Shown here one piece after another: positions 45,740-63,897 of a stretch of DNA of 64,000 nucleotides (positions are counted from its first letter, which is position 1; each line of letters opens with the position of its first letter). Under the pieces are notes generated by a model. The model was not told the DNA's origin. It did no database searches and saw only the letters and a program-made list of their open reading frames with translations. A program made the translations under genes and the position numbers. The DNA is taken from positions 62,001-126,000 of IMG/VR virus record IMGVR_UViG_3300036770_004723. The stretch is one strand, 5' to 3'.

Positions 45740-46369
45740 TTAAATGACGTAACCTAAGGTCATAATACTATTAAAAATACTTTCAGAAGTTTCGGAGATC
45801 GTTTGCCCAGCAATATCAACAGTAACATGGTTTTTAGGCATAAGAGTGTGATCAAAACTACCGTTAATTATTCTTTCGTATGCCAAAGAGACTTGTTTTT
45901 TCTTAGTAGAATATTCTTCTTCTATCCTATCATCGAAGACTTCTAGATCTTTTCCACGACTGTTTGACATATAAAATAAAATGTCAGGACGCATACTACG
46001 CAAATCACACATATCAATACAGTTAGCAAAGTGTTTTTCTTCTACGCCTTTACCACCACATTGGTAAGCATAAGTTGAATAAAACCATCTATCACAAACA
46101 ACTATAGCTTCAGTTTTCAATAATTCACGTATTTGCGTTGAAAGTTGCTTACGAGAAGCAAACATCAAAAGCAATTCAGTAACAGGACTTACTGATTCTT
46201 CATAATTGTCTTTAACAGTATCTCGAATTTTTTCCGCCATAGGTGTACCACCGGGTTCACGAAAAATAAAGATTCTCTTATTTGGATACTTGGCCGAAAG
46301 ATTCTTAATTAATTGAAAAGATTGCACAGATTTACCGCAATTATCAAGACCTTCGAAAACAATGAACAT
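45740..46369 (-). CDS. tmk: Thymidylate kinase
   Basis: FIVFEGLDNCGKS, REPGGT, ELLLMFASR, CDRW..STYAYQ; start at ATG 46369 with GAGG SD. Confidence 0.95.
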   Translation of the reverse strand: MFIVFEGLDNCGKSVQSFQLIKNLSAKYPNKRIFIFREPGGTPMAEKIRDTVKDNYEESVSPVTELLLMFASRKQLSTQIRELLKTEAIVVCDRWFYSTYAYQCGGKGVEEKHFANCIDMCDLRSMRPDILFYMSNSRGKDLEVFDDRIEEEYSTKKKQVSLAYERIINGSFDHTLMPKNHVTVDIAGQTISETSESIFNSIMTLGYVI

Positions 46370-46380
46370 AATTACCTCGC

Positions 46381-46408
46381 AAAAAAGGCGGCTCAAGTGG
46401 CCGCCTTT
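46381..46408 (-). terminator. Terminator closing the tRNA/ncRNA transcript
   Basis: AAAGGCGGC-CACTTGA-GCCGCCTTTTTT. Confidence 0.75.
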
Positions 46409-46416
46409 ACGTTTAA

Positions 46417-47668
46417 CTAACTTGGATCTGAGTATCTGGCAGTTTTGTAATATGCACCAGAAACTTTTCTAACGTGGCCGAACCTTTTCTGATAGCCAGA
46501 TACTCAGATCAAAATTAGCTAGAGGCTGTTGTCTTATTTTCCATGCAACACAAACTTCGTTACTTTATAAGGCAACAGCTTTTTCTATTGGTTTATTTTA
46601 TAGACTAATGTTTAGCACATTAAAATAATCGCGATCATCAATTCAGTTAATGCTATTCGAGGCTAAACATTCAATAGATCTTTACCTCAGTGAGTTTTTA
46701 TAATGCGCAGGCTTGTGCGCAATTTGTACGGCCTTTTCCAGTTTACTATCATATAGTGATTGATAGTAAAAAAGTGGCCGGAGTTTTAATTGCCTACTAC
46801 ACATCAAAGACGTATATGATCGATAGTATTTAATGTGTACCAAAATTTTTAAAAGAAAAACAAATATCAAGTGCATAATAAACTTACTCTGTTGAGGTGA
46901 CTGTATAATGTGATAGGTACACGATCTTGGTAGTTACATAAAAATACCGAACGCAATAATTGAAAATGGCGTAACAATTAAAGGTTTAAGATTAGTATCA
47001 GCAATTTGCAGGTCGTACAAATTGAGAATTCGTGTCACATTTTCTTTGACTAGAGCTTTAATGGAGAAAAACCCTATTCAAGGTTTTAACAATGAACGGT
47101 CGAGAGGACGCAATCTGACACCCCAGTTTAATCAGATAAAACAATTCATTGTTTAATAAACTAATACAGTCGAAATCTTTAAGGGATGGCTTACCTTGCA
47201 AGCTGGAACCCCTTCCATTTTAAGGTAAGCCATTTAAAAAAATGTTTTGATCACACTGCTAGACAATCGCAGGCTGGCGACCCACGCAAGAGATCCTACT
47301 GCCTTTAGTCTTCGGCGATCATTGGAATCCTTATCTGTCAAAGCGAACAAATTTAAAATTCTACGCAAAATGTTTTCTTGCCATACAGCAGAGAATACAA
47401 AATGGTGAACCCGAAATTTTTCGTAGATAATACACGCTAGATAAGATGACTAGTCTTACCAACACAAGCACAGTAAGTAATATAAGATGCCATGTTGCTG
47501 CCGTGTTAGAGTCTAGCAGTGTGATCAAAACATTTTCATTAAATTGATTTTAAAGTAAACACTAATGGCTTAGTACGTGTCAGCAATGCGTTTGAACTGC
47601 CCGATGTCACCTAAAAGACTTCAACGCACCTACATCTTTTATTTTAGAAGTGCTTACATTAAAATTAA
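46417..47668 (-). ncRNA. Array of eight abutting stem-closed structured RNA domains
   Basis: Closing inverted repeats at 46417-46518, 46525-46579, 46584-46678, 46684-46898, 46899-47171, 47186-47233, 47239-47536, 47544-47668; no credible ORF. Confidence 0.65.
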
Positions 47669-47682
47669 CTTTTATAATAAAT

Positions 47683-47759
47683 TGGAGCGTGATATGGGAA
47701 TCGAACCCATGATGACGGAGTGGAAGTCCGACGGTTTACCTAGCTAACTCTAATCACGC
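47683..47759 (-). tRNA. tRNA-Gly(TCC)
   Basis: GCGTGAT/ATCACGC-T-CCA, loop CTTCCAC, GGTTCGATTCC; weak D-stem. Confidence 0.85.
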
Positions 47760-47914: not shown

Positions 47915-47991
47915 TGGTGGCCCCAACTGGACTTGAACCAGTGACCCATCGCTTATGAGGCAATCGCTCTAACCAACTGAGCTATGGGGCC
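47915..47991 (-). tRNA. tRNA with CAT anticodon, Ile2 (lysidine) type
   Basis: GGCCCCATAGCTCAGTTGGTTAGAGC...CTCATAA...GGTTCAAGTCCAG..GGGGCCACCA, closely resembles ileX. Confidence 0.9.
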
Positions 47992-63614: not shown

Positions 63615-63897
63615 TAGTTGTTTGCCGGGTGTTGGGGTTCCGGGGAAATATTCTATAATGTATTAAAGCTATTCGCTTCGCTCATAGCTACTAATGTGTT
63701 GCAAGCTAACGCTTGCACTTTTTCTTTTCTTTTCTTTTCTTTTCTTTTCTTTTCTTTTCTTTTCTTTTCTTTTCTTTTCTTTTGATCTTTAGTTGTTTGC
63801 CGGGTGTTGGGTCCTGGAGTAATTGTTTATTAATGTGTTTTAGGTTGTTTCGCTTCGCTACACAACCAAAACGGATTGCAAGCGTTAGCTTGCATCC
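63615..63897. repeat. Two ~105-bp imperfect direct repeats with conserved hairpins flanking the microsatellite (origin-like)
   Basis: TAGTTGTTTGCCGGGTGTTGGG x2, TTCGCTTCGCT loops x2, TGCAAGC-N4-GCTTGCA x2. Confidence 0.75.
63718..63783. repeat. (CTTTT) x ~13 microsatellite
   Basis: Directly visible. Confidence 0.95.

What the first reader, a model, noticed from the sequence alone, without database searches (positions are those of the whole stretch)
47239..47536. 298-nt element closed by a perfect 26-bp inverted repeat
Seen: AAAATGTTTTGATCACACTGCTAGAC ... GTCTAGCAGTGTGATCAAAACATTTT, enclosing nested stems on the minus strand (CTTACTGT/GCAGTAGG, CTTATCT/AGATAAG, TCTACG/CGTAGA). Inference: a long rod-like ncRNA. 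The terminal repeat recalls retron a1/a2 arms or an RNase III substrate. No reverse transcriptase or transposase is in the window, so an orphan or decoy RNA, or a MITE-like element, remain open.
Basis: partly seen in the sequence, partly recalled or inferred. Interest (0 to 1): 0.6.

Follow-up and report, generated by a model that had tools for sequence, protein, structure and literature searches.

The report
Conserved structured RNA in jumbo phages
The perfect 26-bp inverted repeat is real, but it is not a retron, MITE or invertible switch: it is the closing helix of a roughly 300-nt structured RNA, read from the minus strand, that a clade of uncultivated jumbo phages keeps at one fixed place and that matches no described RNA family.

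Summary
Window 47239-47264 and 47511-47536 form a perfect 26-bp inverted repeat, the longest in the 286.6-kb phage genome.

The same element sits at the same slot in 15 related contigs: 13 from public assemblies and two IMG/VR jumbo phages. The slot lies between a small ORF or tRNA cassette and a hairpin whose loop holds GGGGUUCCA.

The closing helix is kept by covariation:
- There are two G-C/A-U compensatory pairs.
- Every non-Watson-Crick cell is G.U on the gene-sense (window minus) strand: 25 G.U and 0 A.C across ten sequences.
- Two further sequence-unrelated versions of the helix exist.

The interior also has conserved helices and invariant motifs. It is more conserved at nucleotide level (77-82%) than the neighbouring thymidylate kinase gene (70-73%). 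The window copy is simply the only one with no wobble pair.

Several readings fail:
- The genome has no reverse transcriptase and no serine invertase.
- There is no second copy and no target-site duplication.
- Nothing in Rfam matches.
- The ORFs inside the element are not conserved.

The most likely role is a stable or processed non-coding RNA whose 27-33-bp helix suits RNase III, but its function and expression are untested. It is a new RNA family of moderate interest.

The parts
47511..47536 (-). 5' strand of the closing helix (right arm of the inverted repeat on the + strand).
   Evidence: Perfect 26-nt arm. It is paired in all 10 window-type relatives, with 2 compensatory and 3 wobble positions.
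47239..47264 (-). 3' strand of the closing helix (left arm on the + strand).
   Evidence: Across the helix there are 244 Watson-Crick, 25 G.U, 0 A.C and 0 other cells.
47537..47545 (-). Outer extension of the helix, 5' side: G.U pair, bulge, then 6 bp (AUUUAA).
   Evidence: Minimum-free-energy fold of the minus strand. The extra pair is G.U on the minus strand only.
47230..47238 (-). Outer extension of the helix, 3' side.
47265..47510 (-). Conserved interior of the RNA. Consensus helices are 47500-47484/47474-47460; AGUC 47451-47448 / GACU 47310-47307; 47430-47425/47336-47331; 47423-47407/47361-47344; 47299-47295/47290-47286; and 47285-47278/47276-47269. The motif AAGACUAGUCAUC at 47445-47457 is invariant.
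   Evidence: Alignment A9 and RNAalifold, mapped to window coordinates. Pairing on the sense strand is 0.92-0.95, against 0.67-0.86 on the antisense strand and 0.2-0.56 in slid controls. Nucleotide identity to relatives is 77-82%.
47185..47234 (-). Hairpin H2 directly after the element. It has a 13-bp stem, and its loop holds the conserved GGGGUUCCAGCUUGC (47198-47212).
   Evidence: Five compensatory pairs. GGGGTTCCA occurs once in the 64-kb window, where 0.10 is expected. The same motif sits in the same hairpin of L005/L006.
47152..47175 (-). Conserved block UUUCGACUGUAUUAGUUUAUUAAA following H2.
   Evidence: Near-invariant in all 12 aligned sequences. It is a shared exact island with L005.
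47537..47682 (-). Degenerate remnant of a 41-aa ORF. In relatives the ORF is intact and ends with its stop codon in the first bases of the helix.
   Evidence: The ORF is intact in L026-L038. All three window frames are full of stops.
47683..47759 (-). tRNA-Gly(UCC), immediately upstream on the same strand.
   Evidence: It is one of only two tRNAs in the genome.
47915..47991 (-). tRNA-Met(CAU), upstream on the same strand.
46682..46876 (-). Small conserved gene downstream (64 aa here, 65 aa in relatives) with a hydrophobic N-terminus.
   Evidence: It is intact in all 9 sequences compared. Differences fall mainly on codon positions 3 and 1.
46414..46521 (-). Long hairpin (27-bp stem) near the end of the tract, with the conserved loop motif CAUAUUACA.
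   Evidence: It is 91-93% identical to close relatives. Its two wobble pairs are G.U on the minus strand only.
46383..46410 (-). Intrinsic terminator (GGCGGC-loop-GCCGCC followed by U6) that ends the tract, 11 nt before the thymidylate kinase start at 46369.
   Evidence: Read from the sequence. It is homologous to the terminator in L005 and about 89% identical to close relatives.

Best explanation
The inverted repeat is the closing helix of a conserved, roughly 300-nt structured non-coding RNA domain transcribed from the window's minus strand, the same strand as all neighbouring genes and both tRNAs.

On that strand the region reads in this order: a variable tRNA cassette, a 41-aa ORF (decayed in this phage), the element, a conserved GGGGUUCCA hairpin, a variable spacer, a 65-aa gene, a long hairpin, an intrinsic terminator, and thymidylate kinase.

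Shown here:
- The helix and several interior helices are maintained by selection at the RNA level on the minus strand.
- The element is an old, vertically inherited feature of a jumbo-phage clade.

Inferred, not shown:
- Once transcribed, the 27-33-bp regular helix brings the ends of the domain together.
- The helix is most likely cut by the host's RNase III. The phage encodes none.
- Cleavage would release or stabilise the interior as a discrete RNA of about 250 nt. Its invariant motifs (AAGACUAGUCAUC, GUAGGAUCUCUUGCGU) would then act in trans or bind a protein.
For: - Relatives. Fifteen related contigs carry an element at the identical slot. 13 come from public assemblies (L026-L038). Two are IMG/VR phages (L005, L006).
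- Closing helix. In alignment A9 it has 2 compensatory G-C/A-U pairs and 3 wobble positions. The cell counts are 244 Watson-Crick, 25 G.U, 0 A.C and 0 other.
- Other versions of the helix. L026/L029 and L005/L006 have closing helices of unrelated sequence, 26-36 bp long. Even so, both ends and both flanks align significantly with the window (z 4.2 and 4.8, 0 of 300 shuffles as good).
- Strand. Pairing is better on the sense than on the antisense strand: closing helix 0.986 vs 0.906, interior long helix 0.949 vs 0.712, 3' helices 0.923 vs 0.673. Slid controls give 0.2-0.56.
- Neighbouring hairpins. In the four imperfect hairpins of the same tract and its relatives, all 7 G.U-compatible mismatches fall on the sense strand. 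A doubtful 15-nt repeat has one on the other strand.
- Conservation. The element is 77-82% identical at nucleotide level to close relatives. The adjacent thymidylate kinase gene is 70-73% identical. L005 and L006 differ at 20 of 1751 sites, and none of these falls in the 648 nt that cover their version of the element.
- Not coding. The internal ORFs are not conserved: L027 has a frameshift and L028 an early stop.
- Transcription unit. An intrinsic terminator on the minus strand closes the tract.
- Independence from the upstream ORF. The element persists although the upstream 41-aa ORF has decayed in this phage.
Against: - No expression data exist. No RNA run holds this phage.
- Folded on its own, the window's interior is not more stable than shuffles.
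- Most aligned sequences are close relatives, so the covariation rests on few independent substitution events. No phylogeny-aware test such as R-scape was run.
- RNase III cleavage and any trans function are inference only.
- The element could instead be a cis-acting part of the mRNAs of the flanking small genes.
Confidence: 0.6

Rival explanations
1. It is a cis-acting mRNA element rather than a free-standing RNA. It would act as a 3' stabiliser or processing signal for the upstream 41-aa ORF, or as a 5'-UTR regulator of the downstream 65-aa gene, within one polycistronic transcript.
For: In relatives the stop codon of the 41-aa ORF lies in the first bases of the helix. In L005 a 110-aa ORF ends inside the 5' arm. 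The 65-aa gene follows on the same strand.
Against: The window phage keeps the element, in its most perfect form, although the 41-aa ORF is dead. A poorly conserved spacer of about 260 nt (47% identity) separates the element and H2 from the 65-aa gene. The invariant interior motifs are more than a stabilising hairpin would need.
Confidence: 0.25
2. It is an invertible DNA segment (inverton). The two perfect repeats would be recombination sites, and the 246-bp core would flip.
For: Perfect 26-bp repeats flanking a segment of about 250 bp fit the usual dimensions of invertons. Putative invertons have been reported on viral contigs (PMC13501310).
Against: - The genome has no serine recombinase. 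The only integrase-like hit is a type IB topoisomerase.
- One 7.2-kb contig at depth 27.7 spans the element, with no alternative joint.
- In nine of ten close relatives the repeats are imperfect, and every mismatch is G.U on one strand. That is RNA-level selection, not DNA-level.
- No sigma-70-like promoter lies inside.
Confidence: 0.03
3. It is a MITE-like mobile element with 26-bp terminal inverted repeats that inserted into the phage.
For: The size and the perfect terminal repeats fit. The interior GC content is 40.7% against 31-35% in the flanks. A read-length contig from another sample carries the arm with a different outer flank.
Against: - There is a single copy in the genome and no target-site duplication.
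- Exact scans of viral, metagenome and genome collections found no other copy.
- Every relative has the element at the same syntenic slot, with homologous flanks on both sides.
- The 'different flank' in the other sample is the 3' end of the 41-aa ORF that relatives keep there. It is therefore the orthologous locus, not a transposed copy.
Confidence: 0.02
4. It is a retron-type msr/msd RNA whose a1/a2 arms are the repeat.
For: The only support is the superficial resemblance of terminal inverted repeats enclosing a structured RNA.
Against: No reverse-transcriptase domain is found in any frame of the complete 286.6-kb genome or next to the element in any relative (gene tables). Nothing in Rfam matches.
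Confidence: 0.01
5. It encodes a small protein. One example would be a hok-like type I toxin mRNA whose 5' and 3' ends pair, using the 55-aa hydrophobic minus-strand ORF at 47361-47528.
For: The ORF is hydrophobic, and pairing of the 5' and 3' ends resembles hok mRNA fold-back inhibition (my own knowledge).
Against: The frame is not conserved: L027 has a 1-nt deletion and L028 reaches a stop after 38 codons. The putative TTG start lies inside the helix, with no ribosome-binding site.
Confidence: 0.02

Closest known systems
RNase III processing helices in phage polycistronic transcripts and in rRNA or tRNA precursors (T7 R sites, the T4 tRNA-region precursor, 16S/23S flanking stems). Comparison from my own knowledge.
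   Same: A long, regular helix (27-33 bp) is formed by sequences that flank a discrete RNA segment. It lies between genes on one transcript and next to tRNA genes.
   Different: Cleavage has not been shown here. The enclosed 246 nt has its own conserved helices and invariant motifs, which is more than a processing signal needs. The phage encodes no RNase III.
Large phage-associated structured RNAs found next to tRNA genes: GOLLD and ROOL (PMC5737381).
   Same: It is a phage-borne, tRNA-adjacent, covariation-supported RNA of unknown function with no linked protein partner.
   Different: It is much smaller (about 300 nt against 581-800 nt). Neither Rfam model matches, even at E<=10. The tRNA cassette upstream is variable and is absent in L034. 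The element is restricted, so far, to one jumbo-phage clade.
T4 tRNA-region stable RNAs (species 1 and 2, also called RNA C and D). Comparison from my own knowledge.
   Same: They are non-tRNA stable RNAs encoded beside the tRNA genes of a large lytic phage, on the same strand.
   Different: No sequence or model similarity was tested or found. Expression and stability here are unknown.
Correia repeat-enclosed elements of Neisseria (PMC2649163).
   Same: They have inverted repeats that enclose a short non-coding core and form an RNase III-binding hairpin when transcribed.
   Different: Correia elements are multi-copy and mobile. This element is single-copy, syntenic and vertically inherited.
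Bacterial and phage Y RNAs (Ro60-bound). Comparison from my own knowledge.
   Same: The 5' and 3' ends pair into a long closing stem around a structured module.
   Different: There is no Rfam match. There is also no credible Ro60/TROVE gene: the only hit is 16.8 bits in a 264-aa ORF, below the cut-off of 23.

Membership tests
Retron msr/msd non-coding RNA | A reverse-transcriptase gene adjacent to, or at least present with, the RNA. | tested here: not met
   PF00078 finds nothing in the complete phage genome, and the search works on control genomes. No such gene is called beside the element in 13 related contigs.
Retron msr/msd non-coding RNA | Production of msDNA branched from a conserved G. 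| not testable with these tools
   This needs biochemistry.
MITE (non-autonomous transposon) | Several dispersed copies at unrelated sites. | tested here: not met
   There is one copy in the genome. Every relative has it at the same slot. Exact scans of three public collections found nothing.
MITE (non-autonomous transposon) | A target-site duplication flanking the terminal inverted repeats. | tested here: not met
   The flanks read CCATTTAAA | element | CATTAAATT, with no direct repeat at any register. The flanks are homologous to those of L005, whose helix has a different sequence.
Inverton (invertible promoter or segment) | Both orientations present in sequencing reads. | tested here: inconclusive
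   Only assembled contigs were available. One contig spans the element in the window's orientation, with no strand-changing joint. Contigs cannot show minor variants.
Inverton (invertible promoter or segment) | A site-specific recombinase in the genome, and repeats conserved as DNA sites. | tested here: not met
   There is no resolvase or invertase. The only integrase-like hit is a type IB topoisomerase. The repeats in relatives carry one-strand G.U mismatches.
RNase III substrate | A regular double-stranded RNA helix of about 20 bp or more. | tested here: met
   The predicted and covariation-supported helix is 27 bp, or 33 bp with its extension.
RNase III substrate | Cleavage by RNase III in vivo or in vitro. 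| not testable with these tools
   No RNA data are available.
Any Rfam 15 family (including GOLLD, ROOL, Y RNA, 6S, tmRNA, group I/II introns) | A covariance-model match at or near the gathering score. | tested here: not met
   Only the two tRNAs pass the gathering threshold. Nothing overlaps 47239-47536 even at E<=10. The same holds for the L005 version.
Y RNA | A Ro60 (TROVE) protein partner encoded nearby or in the genome. | tested here: not met
   The best hit is 15.5-16.8 bits in a 264-aa ORF, below the cut-off of 23 bits.
Type I toxin mRNA (hok-like) | A conserved small hydrophobic ORF inside the folded-back mRNA. | tested here: not met
   The internal ORFs are broken or shortened in relatives.

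The most novel reading that the evidence does not exclude
The element, possibly together with the GGGGUUCCA hairpin and the conserved block after it, is a new class of trans-acting structured RNA specific to a lineage of environmental jumbo phages. It could be a decoy or inhibitor aimed at a host RNA-binding or defence protein, or an RNA with its own biochemical activity. Its invariant palindromic motif GACUAGUC would serve as a contact or dimerisation site.
Probability: 0.25. Interest if true: 0.7.

Novelty: new variant of a known kind. Interest (0 to 1): 0.45.

Why it matters
Jumbo phages carry large stretches of unexplained sequence, and few of their non-coding RNAs have been described. This work yields a well-delimited RNA of about 300 nt, with a covariation-supported fold and invariant motifs. 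It is fixed at one locus while the tRNA cassette and a small ORF next to it come and go.

The result gives a concrete target for transcript mapping, RNase III assays and structure probing, and a seed alignment for a new RNA family. It also shows that a striking perfect inverted repeat can be the extreme member of an ordinary RNA helix rather than a sign of mobile or invertible DNA.

Tried and rejected
- Retron: no reverse transcriptase in the genome.
- Serine-invertase inverton: no resolvase. The weak integrase hit is a type IB topoisomerase.
- MITE: exact scans for the 21-mer of the arm, for the 20-mer of arm plus inner bases, and for the foreign flank found nothing in the viral, metagenome or genome collections. 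BLAST of the element against the phage and plasmid collections also found nothing. These scans need exact words and so miss diverged copies. The relatives were found only through neighbouring proteins.
- The 14-nt match to the arm inside the thymidylate kinase gene (45845-45858): treated as chance, because it lies in a conserved coding region.
- Replication origin: the GC-skew turning point is about 11 kb away, at window ~58.5 kb.
- Phage-encoded RNase III or a dsRNA-binding domain: none.
- Ro60/Y RNA: only a sub-threshold TROVE hit.
- Homology with the 236-nt repeat-closed element of Phage NCTB (L004 11398-11633): no convincing alignment. NCTB also lacks the GGGGTTCCA hairpin.
- The pattern GGGGTTCCA-N33-45-ATTAGTTTA in IMG/VR: apart from the L005 and L006 contigs, all 9 hits were chance matches in coding-like sequence.
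- MAFFT plus RNAalifold on window and L005 alone: this gave an out-of-register alignment and was not used.
- Steps not attempted: a covariance model was not built, because the alignment exceeds the 400-column limit. The count of structure pairs was not used, because it would have needed a 505-character typed structure string. The equivalent counts were made in a script.

Full report
**Setting.** The window is bases 62,001-126,000 of a 286,584-bp IMG/VR virus record judged complete, with 34.6% G+C. It came from a subsurface metagenome. Its UvsX/RecA-like recombinase places it among jumbo phages. The nearest named relative is Phage NCTB (59% identity), followed by Erwinia Y3-like phages.

**Observation.** Arms 47239-47264 and 47511-47536 are 26/26 complementary, with 246 nt between them. 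This is the longest inverted repeat within 3 kb in the whole genome; the next is 19 nt. The element is single-copy. It lies in the largest gene-poor gap of the genome, 46397-48001. The only two tRNA genes, tRNA-Met and tRNA-Gly, are in the same gap, both on the minus strand like all neighbouring genes. Rfam 15 reports nothing here except the tRNAs, even at E<=10.

**First tests pointed away from a structured RNA.** Folded alone, the 246-nt interior is no more stable than dinucleotide shuffles on either strand (z +0.37 and -0.02). Sliding 120-nt windows show no local signal inside it. I therefore considered DNA-level readings.
- The genome has no reverse transcriptase and no serine recombinase. 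Its only integrase-like hit is a type IB topoisomerase.
- Only the source sample holds the phage. One 7.2-kb contig spans the element with no alternative joint.
- A 151-nt contig from a second sample of the same study matched 47504-47536 with one mismatch, then diverged exactly at the outer end of the arm. That looked like a second genomic context.
- Exact-word scans for the arm and for that foreign flank found nothing in three public collections.

**Synteny changed the picture.** Two IMG/VR jumbo phages (L005 and L006; UvsX about 90% identical, interrupted by inteins) are collinear with the window. At the slot of the element they carry a 187-nt domain closed by an imperfect 36-nt repeat, which folds very well (z -7.74).
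- Both ends of the window element and their flanks align significantly with that domain (z 4.2 and 4.8; 0 of 300 shuffles as good).
- Collinear exact islands follow: GGGGTTCCA, ATTAGTTTA, TTGCGTCC, CATATTACA and the terminator.
- GGGGTTCCA occurs once in the 64-kb window, where 0.10 is expected. In both lineages it sits in the loop of a hairpin whose stems differ in sequence.
- L005 and L006 differ at 20 of 1751 sites. None of the differences falls in the 648 nt that cover their domain and its downstream hairpins.
- In the four imperfect hairpins of this tract and its relatives, all 7 G.U-compatible mismatches lie on the gene-sense strand. A doubtful 15-nt repeat has one on the other strand.

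**Closer relatives settled it.**
- Sources. A protein search with the neighbouring thymidylate kinase found five homologues of 68-74% identity. A 41-aa ORF found beside the element in their contigs led to a cluster of eight sequences. Together they gave 13 contigs from at least 13 samples.
- Presence. All of them carry the element at the same place. Ten are 'window-type'. Their arms differ from the window at a few inner positions, and those differences keep the pairs.
- Pair changes. Two pairs switch G-C to A-U on both sides. Three positions vary between Watson-Crick and G.U.
- Cell counts. Over the 27-bp helix in these ten sequences there are 244 Watson-Crick, 25 G.U, 0 A.C and 0 other cells.
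- Status of the window copy. It is simply the only member with no wobble pair.
- Other versions. L026 and L029 have closing helices of unrelated sequence, 26 and 29 bp. L005/L006 have a third version.

**Interior structure and conservation.** The interior has a consensus structure: a 5' hairpin, a long-range AGUC/GACU contact, a helix of about 23 bp and two 3' hairpins (mapped to window coordinates). It also has invariant motifs such as AAGACUAGUCAUC.
- Sense-strand pairing exceeds antisense pairing: closing helix 0.986 vs 0.906, long interior helix 0.949 vs 0.712, 3' helices 0.923 vs 0.673. Slid controls give 0.2-0.56.
- At nucleotide level the element is 77-82% identical to close relatives, more than the adjacent thymidylate kinase gene at 70-73%.
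- The internal ORFs are not conserved.

**The 'second context' dissolves.** Read on the minus strand, the foreign flank of the contig from the second sample is the 3' end of the 41-aa ORF (...SEHKAFTTH, stop). Relatives keep this ORF directly upstream of the helix. In the window that ORF has decayed into a 146-nt spacer full of stops. The contig is therefore the orthologous locus of a relative, not a transposed copy.

**Architecture on the minus strand:**
1. A variable tRNA cassette. It holds Met, Gly, Arg or Pro in various combinations, and L034 has an HNH endonuclease gene and no tRNA instead.
2. The 41-aa ORF, whose stop codon lies in the first bases of the helix.
3. The element, 47536-47239.
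4. Hairpin H2, 47234-47185.
5. A conserved block, 47175-47152.
6. A poorly conserved spacer (47% identity).
7. A conserved 65-aa gene with a hydrophobic N-terminus, 46876-46682.
8. A long hairpin, 46521-46414.
9. An intrinsic terminator, 46410-46383.
10. Thymidylate kinase, whose true start is ATG 46369.

**Mechanism.** It is shown that this is an RNA-level element on the minus strand, conserved across a clade. It is inferred that the 27-33-bp regular helix closes the domain and is a natural substrate for host RNase III; the phage encodes none. Cleavage would yield a processed, stabilised RNA of about 250 nt whose conserved motifs act in trans or bind a protein. A cis role for the flanking small genes is the main rival. 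The persistence of the element after loss of the upstream ORF, and the variable spacer before the downstream gene, argue against that rival. Expression could not be examined, because no RNA run holds this phage.

**Comparison with known systems.** The element works like the long flanking helices that RNase III uses in phage and rRNA or tRNA precursors. It shares its phage and tRNA neighbourhood with GOLLD and ROOL (PMC5737381). It matches no Rfam model and is not a member of any described family. The retron, MITE, inverton, Y RNA and type I toxin readings each fail at least one defining feature that was tested.

**Limits.**
- Most aligned sequences are close relatives, so the number of independent substitutions is small.
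- No phylogeny-aware significance test was run.
- Reads were available only as contigs.

Noticed in passing
window 47537-47682 (-); L028:3689-3814, L027:65-190, L026:62-187, L029:501-626: Relatives carry a conserved 41-aa ORF (MEVD.ELV.KLLKQMSDCADRI.ELN.SIPD.SEHKAFTTH) between the last tRNA and the helix. In the window phage it has decayed to a spacer of similar length, full of stops. It matches no known family.
   Followed up: partly
window 46682-46876 (-): This is a small gene (64 aa here, 65 aa in relatives) with a hydrophobic N-terminus and an invariant C-terminus KAVQIAHKPAHYKNSLR. It is intact in all 9 sequences compared, with a coding-like substitution pattern. The source annotation did not call it.
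   Followed up: partly
window 46414-46521 (-) and 46383-46410 (-): A 108-nt hairpin with a 27-bp stem, whose wobble pairs are G.U on the minus strand only. Its loop motif CAUAUUACA is shared with L005. It is 91-93% identical to close relatives. An intrinsic terminator follows directly, 11 nt before the thymidylate kinase start. It may be a second conserved RNA element.
   Followed up: partly
upstream of the 41-aa ORF in L028, L029, L030, L032, L034, L035, L037: The tRNA cassette upstream of the element varies between relatives: Met+Gly, Met+Arg, Met only, Gly+Arg or Pro+Arg. In L034 an HNH_3 endonuclease gene sits there and no tRNA is found.
   Followed up: partly
L005:9911-12793 and L006:9911-12142: The UvsX/RecA-like gene is 497 aa in the window but 960 and 743 aa in the two IMG/VR relatives, with the match split in two, as if interrupted by inteins. 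In Erwinia jumbo phages the match is also in two pieces.
   Followed up: no
genome 221258-222928 (outside the window; L007:478-2148): A 556-aa protein with a eukaryote-type topoisomerase I catalytic core (PF01028, E 1.6e-17) is encoded by the phage.
   Followed up: partly
L004:11398-11633 (Phage NCTB, LT598654): A 236-nt segment closed by a 20-bp inverted repeat with one G.U on the gene-sense strand lies in an intergenic gap downstream of recA. It shows no clear homology to the window element.
   Followed up: partly
window 46369 vs 46396 (-): Thymidylate kinase most likely starts at ATG 46369, which has a GAGGT ribosome-binding site and gives the 209 aa seen in all relatives. The upstream TTG at 46396 is unlikely to be the start.
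   Followed up: yes
window ~58,470 (genome 120,473): Cumulative GC skew has its minimum here and its maximum at genome 227,466. The two points divide the genome into large blocks that probably follow transcription direction.
   Followed up: no
window 63700-63894: Two copies of an 18-nt sequence that is itself a small hairpin (TGCAAGC-TAAC-GCTTGCA) lie 177 nt apart in a 1.1-kb gene-free gap at a strand switch.
   Followed up: no
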